Shown here in pieces: positions 49,101 to 57,800 of a stretch of DNA of 64,000 bases (positions within the stretch are counted from its first letter, which is position 1; the number at the start of each line of letters is the position of its first letter). The notes under the pieces were generated by a model. That model did not search any database, was not told the origin of the DNA, and saw nothing but the letters and a program-made list of their open reading frames with translations. The stretch is from Oikopleura dioica. Its lineage: Eukaryota; Animalia; Chordata. The position numbers were made by a program, and so were the translations under genes. The DNA is taken from NCBI GenBank assembly GCA_907165135.1, contig OU015568.1, forward strand, positions 16,007,208-16,071,207, written 5' to 3'.

Positions 49101-51269
49101 ATGCTTAAAAGGCTCACCTGTTCTATTTCCTTTTTTGGTGGTGCCGACCGGGCTGGCGCCAGCGCTACCTGCCGCGCCCGTTTTTGTTAAAAACGGCGCC
49201 ACCATCACCACCAGTGACACCACTCCCCATGGTGTCAAACTTGGCGGCCAAAACACACTACTTCCGGATTCGTAATAAACGCGCTGATCGTAACAATCAC
49301 AAACGCAACCACGCTTTATCGTAGAAACAAATTATTACGTGTCGCATCGCGCGTCTCAAGGCGCAAGAGTTCTGTTCCAAAGGCTCACGTAAAAATGAAA
49401 AATGATCGTAACTCAGTGGGGCTAGAAAAAAGAGCGTAAACTCGTATCTCACTTTTGTCACTACTACCACGACATGAATATTGAATAGGAGCTGCTTTGT
49501 TACTTCTAAGGCAGCAATCGGCCATATCTTTGTCGGCACGGGCAACCGCAGCTCTGACCGGAAGTGGTCTCTCGAAACGAAAATCCAAAAAGCCGATCGC
49601 GAAACTGTATCGCGTATAATGTGCGCGAAGGGGCGCCGTCCCGACGTCGCAACACTCTGGACAGAAGTGGAACCTTAGCCCCATGCGATCACACTTTTTT
49701 CTATTGTATTACAGTACAACGCGTCTTTATCTGTCCGGCTTCGATTAAAGTGGCCGTCAATTTTCATGCCCAGAAATTTTGATCAGTTAAGACACCCGAC
49801 TAGACGCCGTTTAGGCGGTGTAACCTTAACAAACCCAATCATTACACGCCATATTTACATGCCAACATTTCAATTCAATCTTCTAACACATATCTTTAGA
49901 CAATCCTCAACTCGATGCACAAGTATCAGCCTCGCTTTCACATCGTCAGATGCAACGACCTGAGCCGAATCCACATGACAACCTTCCGAACGTACATTTT
50001 CAAGGAGACCCAATTCATCGCCGTGACTGCCTACCAGAATGAAAAGATCACACAACTCAAGATTGACCACAACCCTTTTGCGAAAGGTTTTCGCGATGCG
50101 GGAGCAGGAAAACGTGAAAAGAGGTAATTCATTGCGAAATAATTACATTTTCTAACTCTTTTTTCAGACGCCTCCCGCTTGATTCAACTGGATCAGAGCA
50201 GTCGAATGGTTCCGATTCTCCACCAGCCAAGGCTCATTGCGGGCCAGACAGGGCAGTGATGACGACTCAGGCAGTCTCACCCAGTTCAGCTGCTGCCGGT
50301 CTCGGATTACTCAACAATCCTCACCACATGTTCCCTCACATGATGCACCATTCGCATCCATTGATGCCACATGCTCCTGTTCCGCATTATCCGCCAGCAT
50401 CGTGGGCCAATTTGACAACACCTACATCATTGCCAACGTTACCAATCCCAACAAAATCGACGAGCCCGTCTCAAATCGTCCCGTCAGTTTCATTGCCTAA
50501 ACCAGAAAGTCCAAAGCCTACTTCTGTCGAGGAAGAAAAGGTCGAGCCAGAAAACGATGACAGCACCGTGCCAAGAGCAGAGAGTGGAGACGAGGCTGTA
50601 AAAACCGAGGCGGAAGAGAGAAAAGATGTTAAAACTGAGTCTCCAGCAGCGACGCCGACCCCCGTTGAAATCAAGGAGGAAGAGGCGGACAAAGAAAGCA
50701 AACGAAGCTCGTCCCGTGTGCCATCCCCAGTGGTGGCTACCACACCCCAGCCAGTTGTCTCGACGCCATTGGTTCATCCAGCTCTTCATGGTATTAGCTC
50801 GTTGCTGAACAATGGGCTTGGGCACACAGCTTCCGTCCTTCAACAACAAATTCTTGCCGCGCAAACTCAACTCGCGCAGCAACACCAAGCCGCCCAAGCG
50901 CAGATCGCTCAACTTCAATCCGCACTCGCCTTGGCCCAGCAGAGTTCTCTTCTGCAAAACAACCTGCTCAACCAAATTCCAGCGAGCATTTCCGGACCAA
51001 ACGCAGCGGCCCAGGCGCAGGCAGCGTCAATCCTCGCCACTGCACAAGCCCAAGCACTTCAACAGAAACAGGCTCAAGCACAAACTGCCCTCCAAAATCC
51101 GCTGCTGACGTCGCTAGGATTGGCCGGTCTCGCGAAGCCGACGCCACCGCCCGCCCAAGTCGCGGCTGAGAAGATTTACCGAGACGCTATGGTCAGTAGA
51201 GGTCTTCAACTGCCTAACCCCGACGTTCTGAAACAACTCTCTCTGCTCAGGCAGCAGCAGCAACAATAA
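46179..51269 (+). CDS. TBX2/3: T-box transcription factor Tbx2/3, 6 exons
   Basis: [106 protein letters not shown]...KREKR; Ala/Gln-rich C-terminus. Confidence 0.93.
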
Positions 51270-51350
51270 CCACAATGCAGTGTTCAAATATTATTTTATC
51301 TTGCTCAGAATAAATGTATTATTAAATCATTCACTACATTTTTCTTCGCC

Positions 51351-52143
51351 TCAGTACGGCAGAAATCTCACTTGACGCGCTTTTGCTACAATTTCTTCGA
51401 TCTTCGGATCTTGCATCAATCTCTCCACGACTTTGACCCCAGTTGGACTGAAAGCTTATGGAAAATTCTAGCGAAGGAGGAAACTTACCAGTTCTCCTTG
51501 AAATATCCATGTACGTTAACTCTTGGATCATCAACAAAGATCCACAAGTTGAGAAGCATAAGATCTGCCACTGATCGTTTACCGCCGATGACCATGTCGG
51601 TCACATGAGCATATTTGAGGATTTTCTCGATTTGAATGAATGCTTCCACTGCTCCAGCTTTTACGGCCTTGTAAAACACTCGTCCTTGTTCAGTCAAATC
51701 TTCAAAAAAAAGTCAAATCTTTTTACAGAACCGGAAATAACCAACCGTCCTGGTCAACAGCTGCTTTAGCTACATAGCCCGGTTTGAGCATTTTCATCCA
51801 AGCCTCTTCGATACTTTCATAGACCATGTCCGCCTTGAGACTTTCGACGCCCTTGAGCTTCTTGAACGTCGTCTGCTTCAGGCAAAAAGCGATAATTGCC
51901 TTCGTCTGAGAAAATGACACGCCGTCAACTTTCAAGACTGGAAGCTGGCCAAGAGGAAACTCGTCTTTCTGCGACGCGAACTTCTCCGAGCGCCATTCCA
52001 ACCGGGTGTCTTCGAACTCAATTCTGAATCGATTTCAGTTCGTCGAAGAACATCTGCGCGTCTTACCCACTAAGCTCTAGAAGAGTCCGAATGACGAAAA
52101 CTCGACCGTGGCAGGAAAAGTAGATAAGCTCTATTTTGGCCAT
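51351..52143 (-). CDS. Glutathione S-transferase (sigma/alpha-like cytosolic GST), 4 exons
   Basis: LIYFSCHGR (catalytic Tyr position), IEFEDTR, FPLGQLPVLKVDG, SQTKAI and VIGGKRSVADL. Confidence 0.88.
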
Positions 52144-52820
52144 TTCACACAGAAATCTCTCGTTTTTTTTTTATTTTTGTTTGAGAAAGACAAATCCGAC
52201 CAATTGGCTACTGGCAGTAATGTTTTATGCAAAATTTTATATCAGCCTTTTCAAATCGGTTAATAAAAAGCGTCTGATGGAGGTGTTGATGAAAATTGCT
52301 TTGATTGGCTACGCTTCTGTGAGAAAATAGTTAATTTTAGGTTTCTTTATTTCATATTTTTTTAAAAGAGAAATCAGTAAAAATTGGTATAATTATTCTG
52401 TCAATAACTCTTGTTCCGTATTTTTCTACTGCGATACTTTTCACACTCCAAAATTATGACTTCTTTGAATTATGATAGCTTTTTCTCATTTTTTATCCCC
52501 TTTTTATCTCAAATTTCGCTGTCCAGAACCCTGTGCGTTGGGCCATTTGACGAGCTTGTCGAACTTGGCATCGCGCTCGTTAGTGTAGTACCCGATGTGT
52601 GTTATTCACACTCCTTCATCGCTCAATTTGTGTGTTTGCTGCTTCTGCCGCTGCTTGCGCGTTTGCCAAGCCTGCAATGATCGACTGCGCCCTGCTCACT
52701 CAAGCGCTACTGTATCTTCTCTCTTCCTCAAAGAAAAAGATTCAAAGTCGCTGTTCTCGTTGTTTGATTTTCAACGAGTTCGCTTAATTCTTCGATTTCT
52801 CTTCAGATTTTCTCCGTCGC

Positions 52821-52979: not shown

Positions 52980-53483
52980 GGCGGCATTTCAGTGTGTGCT
53001 ATGGCGTCGTTGCGCGTGTGTTGCGACTGGATCGTTGAACGTGCCGTGTGCTGTGAAGTGGAGTGGAGTGTTGTCAGTCGCGAGGGTCAGTCGCCGAGCG
53101 TCGCGGGCCGCCCACTCGCGTGCGCCCTGTGTGTGCTGCCGTTGCGTTGCTAACCCCACTAGCGCTGGCTTCTCCTTCGCCTTCGCTAGTTGTGTGTGTG
53201 TGCGCGGGTTAGCGCCGTCGCCGTTGCCGTGGAGTGATTCGCCCCTCTCGTGCGCTGCGGCCTCCGACGGTGTGAATGGCTGCGCAGCTGCCGCCGCTGC
53301 CCTCCGCGCTCACCAGTGCGCCAAAGGGCACGAAGCGAACCAGATCTGCGCAGAGCGAGGAGAGACCTACAACAAAGCCCACTCAACCCAGGGAAACAAC
53401 GCGAAGGAATAAAAGCAACGCGCAGCCACACACACGCGCGCGCGCCGAGCCAGAGGAAAGAGAGAAATATCGAGAATTAGTAG
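52980..53483 (+). promoter_or_regulatory. CpG- and GT/CA-rich low-complexity promoter/5'UTR of the HTH-array gene
   Basis: (GT)n, (CA)n, (CG)n and GA tracts ending in a strong donor AG/GTGAGT at about 53483; the matching acceptor TTCAG at about 53697 lies just before the ATG at 53714. Confidence 0.45.
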
Positions 53484-53713
53484 GTGAGTGAGCTTCCTGC
53501 TTTTTCACCCGTATCGCCCCAGATTTTGCGTTTTTCCTCCGATTGTGATCAATTTTGATCAATCGCGTTTCTTATTCGAGAAAAATGAAGCCGCTGTCTT
53601 CTCTCTAGAATTATAACAGCGGAGATTATCCCTTTCAGATCGCTGATTTTCCTTAGAATTTCCCTTTTTGATCGAGAAAAACTTGATTTTCTTCAGATTG
53701 AATCGCGTCTAAA

Positions 53714-56594
53714 ATGGAAATCAAAGACACTGATGATGGCGTGAAAACAGAGTCTCACGAAGAGGAAGAGTCGATGGAGCTGATCGAAGAAGATGAGGAC
53801 GAGTTATTCAGAGAAGAAGAAGAAGATGACGACACGCCGTTGTTTAAAATAGTCGATGAATACACATCTGGCGCGGTCACTATTGACGAGCTCGCCGAGA
53901 CATATGAGCGCGACGTAAAATCGATTTTCGAGCTGCTTTCTGGGGCTAATCTTCCTGAGGACTACTCCACGAGAAAAGAGGGCAACTGCAAGGTGTTCCC
54001 TCTTGAGAAGCAGCGCATTCTCGTCTTTCAAGGAATGGATAAATACTCACATGAAATAGGAATTTAAATTTGAAGCCATAAAACACGATACTCTCTGAAG
54101 CTACGAGCCTGACAGATATACACGTCGCCGCGCTCCTCGTCTGTTGATAGATGGGCGCATGCTCTTAGCTTGTGTGTTAGCTTCGAGCGTATTTATCCAC
54201 GATCAGTTTTGAAATGTTGGTTCGACGGGGAAACGGCGCATCGCTATTTGGATACGAAGATGATATTGGCCCGGGCTGTGGAGATACGCGATGCACTCAA
54301 GCTTCGCCTTCTTCCGATCTCGGAAGGGACAATCCGTGGTTTTCTCGACGTCTACAACATTCGTCTCTCGGAGCAGACAAAGTTGCCGGACAAATCAGCG
54401 GGCAAACATGTCCTCGAATCCGCCGTAATCGAGTGGTACAAGGTCGAGTCCGAGAAACGCGTCATCTCCAGTCAAAACATCATGGACAAAGCCTACGAAA
54501 TAATCGAAGAAAAGGGCCTCAATTACACCGTGACGAAATCGCTGCTATCTACGCTTTCCAAGAAGCACGGTATCAAGCTTTCGGAGCAGCCAAGGTTGAA
54601 TAATTACGCCTCTGTGAAAGATAAGGTGGCCGAGTGGTACCGCACCGCCTCCAAAACGAAGCTCATCTCACACCAGAGAATCGTCGAAAAAGCGAGAGAA
54701 GTGGCGAAAGAACTCGGCGTTGACAGAAGTTTCAACAAGTACTGGGCGGCTAACTTTTGCAAATCGTACGGCTTCGAGTTCAACGACCAGAGCATGGCGG
54801 TGAAAGGAAAAGAATTGCGCTCGAAGCTCAAGGAATGGTACGAAGAGACATCAATGACAGAAGTTGTCACCTACAATACTTTGATGGATGCAGCGAAAAT
54901 GATAAACAAAGAGCTGGAAGCCGAGGTCGATATTACAAAAGGCTGGGTGAGCAGTTTCGTCAAGATCAACGATATTCGCCTCTCAGAGCAAGACTCACTC
55001 AAGGTAACGCGAAAAGAAACGCGAATCAATCACGAATTAACTGTTCTGTTTGTAGAGTGTGCCGAAAGTCTACGAGAGATTAAACGATTGGTACGAAATT
55101 GAATCGCAATTCCGTGAACTTGGAGCGAAAGAGATCCAAGAGCGAGTTCTCTTCCTTGCCGACAAGTATGGCCTCGCGAGAGATCGAGTTCACGATCACT
55201 TTGTCGCCGGCTGGCAGCGCAAATTCAACATTAATCTTCTCCAGTCTCCTGCTAAAATAAATCGAATCAGAGAGCGCGACGCATTTGATGTCGAAATCGA
55301 AGAGTGGTTCAATAAAGAAATTATTCATCGTATGGTATCTACCGCGGAAGTCAAGAAGTTCGGCGAGCAGCTGATTGCTGAGGGAAAGTATCAGGACAGT
55401 TTGGTCAAGGTAAGCATCAACTCATCCTTCGTTAGTTCAAGAATTTCGTCTAGGATAAATTCTGGCATGAGCAACTGTTCAAAAGACGAGGTATCTCCAT
55501 CGCGTCACAGCCGCATTACACGCGCAAAACGCCGTCAAAGCGAAAGGCAGAGCCCATGTCACCCAAAAAGGAAATCGATAATAGCGGCTACTCAAACTCA
55601 CCACCCAAGTTGGATGCGATCGCCACTGTAACTGACTATAATGACGAGCCGGAGGATCTTTCAATGCCAAAGACAAAGATTCAAAAGTTGCTCAAAGAAG
55701 AGAGTATTCATTCCTCGTCGTCGCCGTTTTCAATGTCGCCAAGCTCTTCCCCTTCCGTCACTTCACGAGTTTCCACGCCGCCCATGTCCGGCAATCCGCC
55801 ATGGATGGACGAAGTCTGGGAATGGTACTCGACGGAGACGAAGAAGCGAATTCTCGTCCGCTCCGATGTCCACAACAAAGGAGTCAGCCTCAACATTGGC
55901 ACCGAAATTTCCAAGTCTTGGGTCAAGGTAATCGTTCTTCTTTCTCGTTTGGTTTCTTACTTTTTCTCTTTCAGAACTGGTGTCGAAAGTACAAGGTGAA
56001 TTTCTTGGACCAGCAAGTCTTCCAGGACATCGCGATTATCGAACAGAAAGCGCTCGATTGGCTTCTCAAGAGCGAAAGACCAACTCTCGGGCGCGACGAT
56101 GGAACGGGAATTGAAGATATCTTGCGAAAGGGTGAGTTTCAGCTTGTCAATTAGCTCTTTATAATATATTGATTGTAAAATGATCGTTTTCAGGAGCAGC
56201 AGAGCGTGGCATCTCCGACGATTTTATTACCAAAAAGTACTTGGAGCGGTTGATCAAGCGAAAGAGCGTTACCAAACCTAAAGCCTTCATGCAGAAGAAG
56301 TTCGGCACGATGACGCCCGAGGATGAGGATGAATCGGCATCCTTTAGCAACTTCTTCTCGCAGAACTTCACTAGTTCGGGTTTTACAGATATCACCGAAA
56401 CGGTCGAGCACAAGCCCGCAGAGATCACACCTGTCAAAGAAAATGTCAAATTGGAAAAGGAAGAAAATGGAATGGATCAGCAGTCGATGTTCGTGATGCC
56501 AATGGACGTCGACGAAGTAAATGAACTTGAGTCTGACAAGAAAGAAGGGTCTACTTCGAAGGATTCGGAACTAAGGAACGTTAGAGACGATTGA
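53714..56594 (+). CDS. CENP-B/pogo(Tigger)-like DNA-binding protein: psq-type HTH followed by 7-8 tandem Tc5/CENP-B-type HTH units, no DDE domain
   Basis: Repeating ~57-aa unit with a W[YF]...I...A..I...G.....[SK]..W...F.K...I.L pattern; N-terminal IVDEYTSGAVTIDELAETYERDVKSIFELL; phase-compatible GT-AG introns from about 55005 onward. The first coding junction and the last exon (possibly to 56788) are unresolved. Confidence 0.75.
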
Positions 56595-56953
56595 TTTTGA
56601 ATTGATAGGAAATGTGTCTGATGATTAGACTCTGATTGGTAAGTGGGAAAGCTCGCTCTAACGCTCAAAAGTCCTACTATACTGAAAGATGTATTGGAAA
56701 CTGTAAAGAGCTCAGGTGTCAACCTAACCGAGGAGCAATTGCTGAATTTCATTCGAAACGGAGGACTACAAACTGAAGTTAATTAATTCTAAATTTAATG
56801 CTGGCTATTTGTACAGTTATCTTCAAACACAATAAATTGTACATTTAATATCCTGTCTCTCTCAATTTTCTAGAGCACGTTTGCCTTTCGAACTTGTTTA
56901 TTTCATAAAAATCAGTTGAAAACTCGTGAATTTTTAAGAGTTCGAACTTCAGC

Positions 56954-57800
56954 ATGACAGAAAGACAAATCCGAACTTGTGCAGATGAAGCATGCCAAAA
57001 TGAAAGAACGGAAATGAAAAGTATCATTGAATCGGGAGAATATCTGCAGCGCATTTTTCACTTCTCTGAGTATGAAAAGGCGATCGAGTGCGTTAGGAAA
57101 GTGTGAAAAATAAGAGCTTCATTTTTATAAAGCTGATTTATTTATTCGCATAAAAGAGTGCTCGAGAACGAGAATAAATTCTTCCTTCAACGATTCGAAG
57201 AAGAAAAGAAAAAGCATAAGGAGGAGGTGCAAAAGTGTGTTGCTCAAGTAAAGTTGTCCGAAGAAAATCGAGAGGCCGAGAAGAAACGATACAAGAAGAA
57301 AATCGCGTCGTTGCAAGAAGAGTTGAAGAAGTTTCAAGAGACTGCCCAAAAGAATGTTGTTCCAGTCCCCGCCTTGGAGGAGAATGAAGGGGATGAGAAC
57401 GAGAATGAATACGAAGAAGACGAGCAAGATCCAGAAGAAGATAATGAAGACTTCTATTGTGCCGCCACGACTTCAGCAGCCATTCCACTTGTAGCAGGTT
57501 TCAGGGAAGGTTCTATTGAACTCTCTACTAGAGTTTGTTTTCGCCAAATGTAATTTCTTCGAAAATAAAACCTTTGAAAGTCGGGAACGAGATGGAGGGC
57601 CATGCATTCACAGCGACGATGGACAGCACCCAGACTTCGAATTCAGTGATGACGCTGACTTTGACTCAGACGAATGGGAGGAGGATCCAAACTCGAAGCC
57701 CAAGATCGTCATGCGTCGACGAACTGCCGATAGCAAGAAAAACACGCCAAGGCGAAGAAAAACAAGAAAAATTAAAATCCATCGTGCTGTTTTTTATTTT
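56954..57800 (+). CDS. Orphan coiled-coil protein A; 3' end uncertain
   Basis: TTCAG-C-ATG start; MTERQIRTCADEACQNE...KAIE/VLENENKF...REAEKKRYKKKIASLQEELKK, then an acidic tract. Confidence 0.55.

What the first reader, a model, noticed from the sequence alone, without database searches (positions are those of the whole stretch)
53714..56594. Domesticated pogo/CENP-B-like gene built from a tandem array of about 8 HTH units plus a CtBP-type motif
Seen: a psq-like HTH, then repeats beginning VLKCWFD, VIEWYK, VAEWYR, LKEWYE, LNDWYE, IEEWFN, VWEWYS and probably ALDWLL; several end in I.LSEQ. There is no DDE catalytic domain and no TIR, there are several introns and a spliced 5'UTR, and PEDLS (55649-55663) lies in a Ser/Pro linker. 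Known: pogo/Tigger transposases and CENP-B have one psq-type plus one Tc5-type HTH followed by DDE; such genes were domesticated independently in several lineages; PxDLS recruits CtBP. Inference: a host-co-opted, modular DNA-binding repressor reading a long or repetitive target (centromeric or transposon DNA). I know of no described protein with this architecture. Best candidate for an undescribed system in the window.
Basis: partly seen in the sequence, partly recalled or inferred. Interest (0 to 1): 0.82.

Follow-up and report, generated by a model that had tools for sequence, protein, structure and literature searches.

The report
Tandem CENP-B-type HTH array gene
An expressed, strongly conserved Oikopleura gene encodes a protein built from seven clear (plus two decayed) tandem copies of the DNA-binding helix-turn-helix of pogo transposases and CENP-B, with no transposase catalytic domain; it is probably a modular DNA reader, but its function has not been tested.

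Summary
Window 53714-56786 (+) is a 7-exon gene in Okinawa Oikopleura dioica. It is the ortholog of the unnamed Bergen protein CBY14451.1 / UniRef E4XXQ7 (866 aa).

- **Repeats:** It encodes 7 statistically solid ~65-aa repeats and 2 degenerate ones. Exon 2 scores Pfam HTH_Tnp_Tc5 (E 3.6e-11). A repeat model (pLDDT 94) has CENP-B DNA-binding domain 2 as its best match among 48,161 PDB chains (Z 8.4, 1.6 Å).
- **Not a transposon:** There is no DDE domain and no TIR. The locus is single copy and syntenic with Bergen.
- **Expressed and constrained:** Full cDNAs exist in several RNA runs. dN/dS is about 0.04 although dS is saturated.
- **Helix 3:** In every unit, helix 3 is 97% identical to a more distant ortholog, against 69-75% for helices 1 and 2. 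Units are orthologous one-to-one with a TARA metagenome ortholog, so the array is old.
- **Corrections:** The N-terminal motif is a generic 3-helix bundle and is not shown to be psq. The coding sequence ends at 56786, through a second GA-AG intron, not at 56594. PEDLS occurs only in O. dioica lineages and arises in 1.5% of shuffles, so the CtBP, repressor and centromere ideas are unsupported.

DNA binding is inferred, not shown. I class it as a new variant of a known kind: a domesticated pogo DNA-binding domain amplified into an array.

The parts
53040..53483 (+). GC-rich upstream block and non-coding 5'UTR exon. The 5' end is not defined. The donor is TAG|GTGAGT at 53483/53484.
   Evidence: Bergen cDNA L034 nt 1-171 equals this block and is spliced to the acceptor before the ATG. 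125 of 125 nt are identical to Bergen at 53217-53344.
53484..53696 (+). 5'UTR intron (GT..AG). Its acceptor is also used for spliced-leader trans-splicing.
   Evidence: cDNA L031 starts with ...TCCGATTTCGATTGTCTAACAG joined at the same acceptor. That this is the O. dioica spliced leader is from my own knowledge.
53697..54032 (+). Exon 1: ATG at 53714, acidic N-terminus, conserved 3-helix N motif (53834-53992) and the start of unit R1 (from about 54002).
   Evidence: Read joint 54030/32 to 54205/07. cDNA junction in Bergen. Model helices.
54033..54206 (+). Intron 1, non-canonical GA..AG, 174 nt.
54207..55003 (+). Exon 2: rest of R1 (to 54382), R2 (54407-54595), R3 (54605-54796), R4 (54806-54997).
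   Evidence: Pfam HTH_Tnp_Tc5 E 3.6e-11. Independent-HMM scores of 19-62 bits. R3 alone scores 27.0 bits against a cut-off of 22.2.
55056..55409 (+). Exon 3: R5 (55059-55253) and the N-terminal part of R6 (55278-55409).
   Evidence: 46.2 and 17.3 bits. Intron 55410-55453 is spliced in contig X1.
55454..55927 (+). Exon 4: C-terminal part of R6 (55454-55516), Ser/Pro linker with the basic PSKRKAEP patch (55532-55555) and PEDLS (55649-55663), and the N-terminal part of R7 (55805-55927).
   Evidence: Intron 55928-55974 is spliced in contig X1.
55975..56131 (+). Exon 5: C-terminal part of R7 (55975-56019) and the N-terminal part of degenerate R8.
56194..56575 (+). Exon 6: C-terminal part of R8 (to about 56282), acidic tail, and the start of degenerate R9 (from about 56490).
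56576..56671 (+). Intron 6, non-canonical GA..AG, 96 nt.
   Evidence: Bergen cDNA junction and the homologous window sites. The retained form matches CBY43070.1 (P0017).
56672..56786 (+). Exon 7: conserved C-terminal 37 residues (remnant of unit R9) and the stop codon.
   Evidence: 92-95% identical to the P0014 C-terminus. Aligns to the C-terminal unit of P0060.

Best explanation
This is a single-copy host gene of appendicularians. It encodes a protein of about 870 aa with this layout: acidic N-terminus, small 3-helix N motif, six tightly spaced CENP-B-domain-2/Tc5-type three-helix HTH units (R1-R6), a Ser/Pro linker with a basic KRK patch, R7 plus a degenerate R8, an acidic tail, and a degenerate R9.

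Shown: the unit is the DNA-binding HTH of pogo-type transposases. It was amplified inside one gene, and the catalytic DDE domain and the transposon ends are absent. The array is old, because unit identities are shared with a distant ortholog. It is under strong purifying selection.

Inferred: the protein is nuclear and binds DNA. Each unit would use its own nearly invariant helix 3 as a recognition helix, as CENP-B domain 2 does, so the array would read a long composite or reiterated site. The acidic ends would act as effector or auto-inhibitory regions.
For: - **Domain identity:** Pfam HTH_Tnp_Tc5 on exon 2, E 3.6e-11. The ortholog P0002 scores E 5e-34 with 4 stretches. A unit profile hits CENP-B 75-129 at E 1.4e-8, or 0.0084 with appendicularian units only. 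The unit model (pLDDT 94) has 1HLV_A residues 74-131 as its top match among 48,161 chains (Z 8.4, rmsd 1.6 Å, 56 aligned; the next match is at Z 6.3). The multi-unit model gives the same top hit at Z 8.9.
- **Array:** 7 units are significant with an HMM built from other species only; shuffles reach at most 8.7 bits.
- **Host gene:** Exon-by-exon collinearity with CBY14451.1 at 79-95% identity. Flanking genes are collinear with the Bergen contig. Full-length cDNA contigs exist in at least 5 RNA runs, and reads or contigs map from X1 and X6-X8. dN/dS is 0.042-0.046 with dS about 1.7. 36 of 40 listed read differences fall at third codon positions.
- **No DDE, no TIR:**
- **Helix 3:** Helix 3 plus tail is 109/112 identical between P0014 and P0060, against 84/122 for helix 1 and 64/85 for helix 2. 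Linkers are about 30% identical.
- **Unit-by-unit orthology with P0002:** scores of 96-182, against 22-84 between units within one protein.
- **Charge and nuclear signal:** R1-R3, R7 and R8 are basic (pI 9.1-9.7). The KRK patch is conserved in the closer orthologs P0014, P0021 and P0060; the distant ortholog P0002 carries a different basic patch (KQKRRR) at that point.
Against: - No DNA-binding or localisation data exist.
- Only R3 passes the Pfam cut-off on its own. R1 and R5-R9 are linked to the family only through the internal profile.
- R4-R6 are acidic or neutral (pI 4.7-6.7), and the whole protein has pI 5.4.
- The multi-unit model has pTM 0.33, so the arrangement of units is unknown.
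- Invariant helix 3 could equally reflect a protein or RNA partner.
- Foldseek E-values for the 64-aa unit are not significant.
Confidence: 0.6

Rival explanations
1. The HTH units no longer bind DNA. The array would be a protein- or RNA-binding scaffold, a beads-on-a-string adaptor whose invariant helix-3 faces hold partners.
For: - R4-R6 and the N motif are acidic or neutral, and the whole protein has pI 5.4.
- R1 helix 3 has no basic residue at the CENP-B FRRRH-equivalent positions.
- Most units fall below the Pfam cut-off.
Against: - The fold and the W..F..[KR][KR] pattern of helix 3 are kept in R2-R7.
- Five units are basic.
- A conserved KRK patch fits a nuclear protein.
- All characterised members of this domain family bind DNA (pogo DNA-binding domains and CENP-B; PMC7386202 and my own knowledge).
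Confidence: 0.25
2. It is a CtBP-recruiting transcriptional repressor acting through PEDLS, targeted to centromeric or transposon repeats.
For: - PEDLS is at 55649-55663 in a disordered Ser/Pro linker.
- It sits in a locally conserved island, DEPEDLSMPKTK[IV]QKLLKE, in the window and the two other O. dioica lineages.
Against: - The motif is absent from P0060 (EINDTS), from P0002 and P0039, and from the paralogous fragment (QKDFS).
- It appears in 305 of 20,000 shuffles.
- No test of CtBP binding or of the targets was possible.
- The CENP-B_N and CENP-B dimerisation domains are absent.
Confidence: 0.1
3. It is a decaying pogo/Tigger transposon remnant or a mis-modelled pseudogene with no function.
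For: - The domain is transposase-derived.
- A truncated, frameshifted copy of exons 4-6 lies 2 Mb away.
Against: - The reading frame is intact across 7 exons.
- Spliced full-length cDNAs exist in several lineages.
- dN/dS is about 0.04 with saturated dS.
- Synteny is conserved.
- Orthologs are found in distant appendicularian-like metagenome contigs.
Confidence: 0.01

Closest known systems
CENP-B DNA-binding domain, domain 2 (PDB 1HLV residues about 71-131) / Pfam HTH_Tnp_Tc5 (PF03221)
   Same: The three-helix fold (Z 8.4-8.9, rmsd 1.6-2.2 Å) and the sequence pattern L..W[YF]...(helix 2)...[GS]W...F.[KR][KR]..I.
   Different: - CENP-B has one such domain, preceded by a CENP-B_N/psq domain and followed by a DDE-derived core, acidic stretches and a dimerisation domain.
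- Here there are 7-9 copies in tandem and none of the other CENP-B domains.
pogo/Tigger/Tc5 transposases and their vertebrate domesticates (TIGD1-7, JRK, JRKL, POGK, POGZ, CENPBD1)
   Same: They are the source of the HTH_Tnp_Tc5 DNA-binding motif. Domestication is seen as low Ka/Ks (PMC7386202; here 0.04).
   Different: - The pogo transposases there carry one or two DNA-binding motifs.
- The listed vertebrate domesticates keep DDE_1 (PMC7386202).
- This gene has an array of HTH units and no DDE_1.
Drosophila Pipsqueak (four tandem psq HTH repeats) and Myb-type tandem HTH repeats (from my own knowledge)
   Same: The idea of several tandem three-helix HTH units, derived from or related to transposase DNA-binding domains, that together read DNA.
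   Different: - The HTH subtype differs: no HTH_psq or Myb Pfam match was found.
- There are more units (7-9).
- There is no BTB domain.
Uncharacterised proteins P0006 (3 x [CENP-B_N + Tc5]) and P0007/P0008 ([CENP-B_N + Tc5] x 3 with C2H2 fingers), and ESM Atlas clusters of 437-626 aa carrying only PF03221
   Same: Several CENP-B-type DNA-binding modules in one protein without DDE.
   Different: - In P0006-P0008 the whole bipartite psq+Tc5 module is repeated, with long spacers.
- Here only the Tc5 unit is repeated, head to tail with 6-13-residue spacers.
- Their organisms are unknown, and none has been described in a paper I could find.
CBY14451.1 / UniRef100_E4XXQ7 (O. dioica, Bergen), 'HTH CENPB-type domain-containing protein'
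   Same: It is the ortholog: all 7 exons are collinear at 79-95% identity.
   Different: It carries only an automatic name. No function is assigned and no repeat architecture is described.

Membership tests
HTH_Tnp_Tc5 / CENP-B-type HTH domain (PF03221) | The Pfam HMM match is above the gathering score. | tested here: met
   Exon 2 scores 43.3 bits against 22.2. R3 alone scores 27.0 bits. P0014 scores 42.2 bits.
HTH_Tnp_Tc5 / CENP-B-type HTH domain (PF03221) | Three-helix fold superposable on CENP-B domain 2. | tested here: met
   1HLV_A is the top match of 48,161 chains: Z 8.4, rmsd 1.6 Å, 56 residues. For R4 in the long model, Z is 8.9.
HTH_Tnp_Tc5 / CENP-B-type HTH domain (PF03221) | Every repeat unit matches the family model on its own. 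| tested here: not met
   - R2 and R4 score 14.2 bits and R7 scores 12.2 bits.
- R1, R5, R6, R8 and R9 have no Pfam match.
- These units are tied to the family only through the internal profile.
pogo/Tigger DNA transposon | DDE_1 catalytic domain. | tested here: not met
   There is no DDE_1 in any exon. None of the 8 DDE_1 hits listed in the genome lies in the window.
pogo/Tigger DNA transposon | Terminal inverted repeats, and multiple copies in the genome. | tested here: not met
   The best inverted pair is 29 nt at 76% and spans the neighbouring gene. The genome holds one full copy plus one fragment.
CENP-B proper | N-terminal CENP-B_N/psq HTH (PF04218/PF05225) paired with the Tc5 HTH. | tested here: not met
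   - The N motif has no match in Pfam or in a PDB profile search at E up to 10.
- The modelled N motif resembles generic Lrp/DeoR-type HTHs at Z 5.1-5.4.
CENP-B proper | DDE-derived central domain and C-terminal dimerisation domain (PF09026). | tested here: not met
   Neither appears in Pfam scans of the exons or of P0014/P0021.
CENP-B proper | Binding to a centromeric satellite box. | not testable with these tools
   No binding or localisation data are available.
CtBP-recruiting repressors (PxDLS motif) | A PxDLS motif in a disordered region, conserved among orthologs. | tested here: inconclusive
   - It is present at 55649-55663 and in P0014 and P0021.
- It is absent from P0060, P0002, P0039 and the paralogous fragment.
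- It appears in 1.5% of shuffles.
CtBP-recruiting repressors (PxDLS motif) | Physical binding to CtBP, and presence of CtBP in the genome. | not tested

The most novel reading that the evidence does not exclude
Appendicularians evolved a modular DNA reader from a transposase HTH. The array would hold 8-10 CENP-B-type units. Each unit's invariant, unit-specific helix 3 would read its own sub-site, so the protein would recognise a composite site of roughly 50-70 bp, or a reiterated one. That would make it an HTH counterpart of zinc-finger or TALE arrays, possibly marking a chromosomal landmark in a genome that is otherwise heavily scrambled.
Probability: 0.3. Interest if true: 0.8.

Novelty: new variant of a known kind. 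Interest (0 to 1): 0.55.

Why it matters
The described domestications of pogo transposases keep one bipartite DNA-binding domain, and in vertebrates they also keep the DDE core. Here only the Tc5-type HTH survived. It was multiplied into a closely packed array that has stayed unit-for-unit conserved across deep appendicularian divergence, in a lineage known for extreme genome turnover.

If the units each read DNA, this would be a new way to build long-site specificity from an HTH. It would also give a candidate chromatin or centromere factor for Oikopleura, and a natural scaffold for modular DNA recognition. If they do not bind DNA, it shows a transposase HTH re-used as a protein-interaction repeat.

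Tried and rejected
- **Pfam on exons 1 and 3-6:** nothing significant.
- **The psq/CENP-B_N reading of the N motif:** no support from Pfam or a PDB profile.
- **Foldseek of the 64-aa unit against PDB:** no E-value at or below 0.001, and CENP-B ranked only 46th. The exhaustive VIA search was needed.
- **The search for homologous proteins with P0014 residues 100-520:** returned only one relative, P0060.
- **phmmer of exon 2 against 1.84 billion representatives:** only 9 hits, so the family is small and divergent.
- **DNA-level repeat search:** no unit periodicity, so the duplications are old.
- **Rfam and folding of the ultra-conserved upstream block:** no family, z = 0.37.
- **Shared intron position in R6 and R7:** rejected, because the two introns lie five codons apart in the unit alignment (my reading).
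- **RNA runs of the species label (X6-X8):** these come from another lineage, about 90% identical, and map only to conserved parts. They say nothing about the Okinawa UTRs or exon 7.
- **Joined spliced protein of the window:** this has no reference, so I did not send it to any search, fold or alignment tool. I searched the window exon by exon by reference and used the database ortholog P0014 for full-length questions.
- **CtBP presence in the genome:** not tested.
Full report
**What is there.** Earlier notes of this scan identify the genome as Okinawa Oikopleura dioica. Reading window 53200-57200 and its ORFs gives a + strand gene with very short introns.

The frames close exactly with these exons:
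- 53714-54032
- 54207-55003
- 55056-55409
- 55454-55927
- 55975-56131
- 56194 onwards

Two introns are spliced in a seawater metatranscriptome contig set, X1: 55410-55453 and 55928-55974, both GT-AG. Poly-A RNA reads of a sister lineage (X6-X8) join 54030/32 to 54205/07, which is a GA..AG intron.

The cluster of the 100%-identical fragment P0001 contains CBY14451.1 / UniRef100_E4XXQ7 (P0014, 866 aa). This is the 'HTH CENPB-type domain-containing protein' of the Bergen O. dioica genome. All window exons align collinearly to it at 79-95% identity.

Bergen cDNA contigs show three things:
- The first and last coding introns are both GA..AG, and the same sites are present in the window.
- The 5'UTR is cis-spliced from an upstream GC-rich exon.
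- In another cDNA (L031), the same acceptor carries what I recognise from my own knowledge as the tail of the O. dioica spliced leader.

The stop at 56594 is therefore that of the intron-retaining form, which is also predicted as CBY43070.1.

**The repeats.**
- Pfam finds HTH_Tnp_Tc5 in exon 2 (E 3.6e-11, three stretches) and nothing else of note.
- A seed HMM built from four window units detects R1 and R7 in the orthologs, and eight units in the unrelated-species protein P0002.
- An HMM built only from P0002 and P0039 units scores window R1-R5 at 19.2, 55.5, 61.7, 58.3 and 46.2 bits.
- The exon-split halves of R6 score 17.3 + 3.7 bits and those of R7 score 19.2 + 9.1 bits.
- The best of 1,400 shuffled exon sequences reaches 8.7 bits.
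- On the contiguous ortholog, R1-R7 score 18.6-57 bits.
- R8 is marginal, at 3-7 bits.
- A ninth C-terminal unit is clear in P0060 (13.1 bits). In O. dioica it is only a remnant that aligns to the P0060 unit.
- Taken singly, only R3 passes the Pfam cut-off.

So there are seven solid units and two degenerate ones.

**Fold.**
- A single-unit model built with a 28-row unit alignment has pLDDT 94 and three helices.
- Foldseek is uninformative for so small a domain.
- The exhaustive VIA search puts CENP-B(1-129) residues 74-131 first among 48,161 chains: Z 8.4, rmsd 1.6 Å, and 2.1 Z above the next match.
- The unit profile hits CENP-B 75-129 at E 1.4e-8 and S. pombe Abp1 at 6.7e-4. With appendicularian units only, CENP-B remains the best natural hit, at E 0.0084.
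- The 476-residue model of the P0014 N motif plus R1-R6 has pLDDT 81 but pTM 0.33. The domains are confident and their mutual arrangement is not. Its top PDB match is again CENP-B domain 2, at Z 8.9.
- The N motif folds as three short helices that resemble generic Lrp/DeoR-type HTHs (Z about 5). It has no psq or CENP-B_N signal by sequence. It is acidic and poorly conserved.

**Host gene, not transposon.**
- There is no DDE_1 in the gene, and none of the genome's DDE_1 hits lies in the window.
- There are no credible TIRs.
- The genome holds one full copy plus a truncated copy of exons 4-6 that appears to carry a frameshift, 2 Mb away.
- The locus is collinear with the Bergen contig across the upstream GST-like gene and the downstream CCDC192-like gene.
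- Uninterrupted cDNA contigs encoding the 866/870-aa protein occur in four RNA runs, and a 791-aa ortholog (P0060) in a fifth.
- Nei-Gojobori dN/dS against the two Bergen-type cDNAs is 0.042-0.046, with dS about 1.7, which is saturated.
- 36 of 40 listed read differences are at third codon positions.

**An old array with unit-specific constraint.**
- TARA Oceans metagenome contigs carry orthologs. These are P0002/P0024, with the N motif and R1 in upstream exons, and P0039, with further units on both sides. That these contigs come from other appendicularians is my inference.
- P0014 units pair one-to-one and in order with P0002 units: R4-c 126, R5-d 182, R6-e 96, R8-g 61 and R1 with the upstream exon 92. 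Scores between units within one protein are 22-84.
- P0002 has an extra R7/R8-like pair, so the number of units varies (8-10).
- Between P0014 and P0060 (59% identical overall), helix 3 plus the I.LSEQ tail of R1-R6 is 109/112 identical, and R7 is 19/20. Helix 1 is 69% identical, helix 2 is 75% and the linkers are about 30%.
- In CENP-B the aligned segment (NGWLDRFRRR) is the third helix of domain 2. That this helix is the recognition helix is from my own knowledge of the 1HLV structure.

**Function.** None of this shows DNA binding. The points in favour are:
- the domain family;
- basic R1-R3, R7 and R8 (pI 9.1-9.7);
- a conserved KRK patch in the linker;
- the invariant, unit-specific helix 3.

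The points against are:
- acidic or neutral R4-R6;
- an acidic protein overall.

I put the modular DNA-reader mechanism at about 0.55-0.6 and a non-DNA scaffold at about 0.25.

The CtBP idea rests on PEDLS alone. That motif is confined to the three O. dioica lineages. It is replaced in P0060, P0002 and the paralogous fragment, and it arises in 1.5% of shuffles.

**Comparison with what is known.**
- Per Gao et al. 2020 (PMC7386202), pogo transposases carry one or two DNA-binding motifs, and the listed vertebrate domesticates keep DDE_1.
- Papers on CENP-B-like domestications (PMC4231638), on TE-derived transcription factors across Metazoa (PMC10027918) and on Tc1/mariner domestication in Drosophila (PMC13548663) do not mention tunicates or HTH arrays.
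- Searches pairing Oikopleura with CENP-B, and HTH_Tnp_Tc5 with tandem, found nothing relevant.
- Uncharacterised proteins with several [CENP-B_N + Tc5] modules exist (P0006-P0008). ESM Atlas holds clusters of 437-626 aa whose only listed Pfam family is PF03221 (scores under 0.9, so leads only).
- This genome has at least one further multi-[psq+Tc5] gene. An earlier scan note (s1-371533) reports another pair, which I did not check.

**Verdict.** The core interpretation, a domesticated pogo-type HTH array, is supported. The psq label, the CtBP link and the repressor or centromere role are not. It is a new variant of a known kind, and it is already present in databases without a name or a description.

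**Procedural note.** The joined spliced protein of the window was not submitted to any tool. Exons were used by reference, and P0014 served as the full-length proxy.

Noticed in passing
window 53040-53483 (especially 53217-53344): A GC-rich block upstream of the gene is ultra-conserved. 125 of 125 nt are identical to the Bergen lineage although synonymous sites in the gene are saturated, and it is 81% identical to the 5'UTR of the distant ortholog cDNA L029. It serves as a cis-spliced 5'UTR exon. It is single copy, has no Rfam family and shows no unusual folding energy.
   Followed up: partly
window 53209-53382 (- strand): A 57-aa ORF antisense to the conserved block (..VPFGALVSAEGSGGSCAAIHTV..) has a similar peptide on the reverse strand of L029 (VPLGALAMAAFGGGSCAASHTI). 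It may be a small antisense coding gene or a first exon of the upstream minus-strand GST-like gene.
   Followed up: no
window 53696/53697: One acceptor is used in two ways in other O. dioica lineages: cis-splicing from the upstream UTR exon (cDNA L034), and joining to what looks like the 3' end of the spliced leader (cDNA L031).
   Followed up: partly
window 54033-54206 and 56576-56671: There are two non-canonical GA..AG introns in one gene. Both are verified by cDNA in the Bergen lineage and sit at the same sites here. Retention of the second gives the alternative stop at 56594.
   Followed up: yes
G000:C1:14069717-14070510 (L016 1498-2291): A partial paralog covers the end of R6, the linker, R7, R8 and the start of the acidic tail. 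It is 51-87% identical and keeps the two intron positions. The frame appears to shift near the start of R7, and PEDLS is replaced by QKDFS. It is probably a pseudogene fragment.
   Followed up: partly
G000:C5:13993937-13995310 (-), loci L001/L004; also L002 (C4:1267010) and L003 (C4:2950504): Another gene has alternating psq-like and Tc5-type HTH ORFs, and there are two more PF03221 hits. So this genome holds several DDE-less CENP-B-type DNA-binding genes.
   Followed up: partly
window 50800-52150 (-) and 56954-57780 (+): The neighbours are a GST_N-type gene and a CCDC192-like coiled-coil gene. They are collinear with the Bergen contig FN653288.1, despite the reported genome scrambling between lineages.
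   Followed up: partly
proteins P0006, P0007, P0008 (loci L036-L038): These are uncharacterised proteins from unknown organisms with three complete [CENP-B_N + HTH_Tnp_Tc5] modules. Two of them also have C2H2 zinc fingers, and none has DDE.
   Followed up: partly
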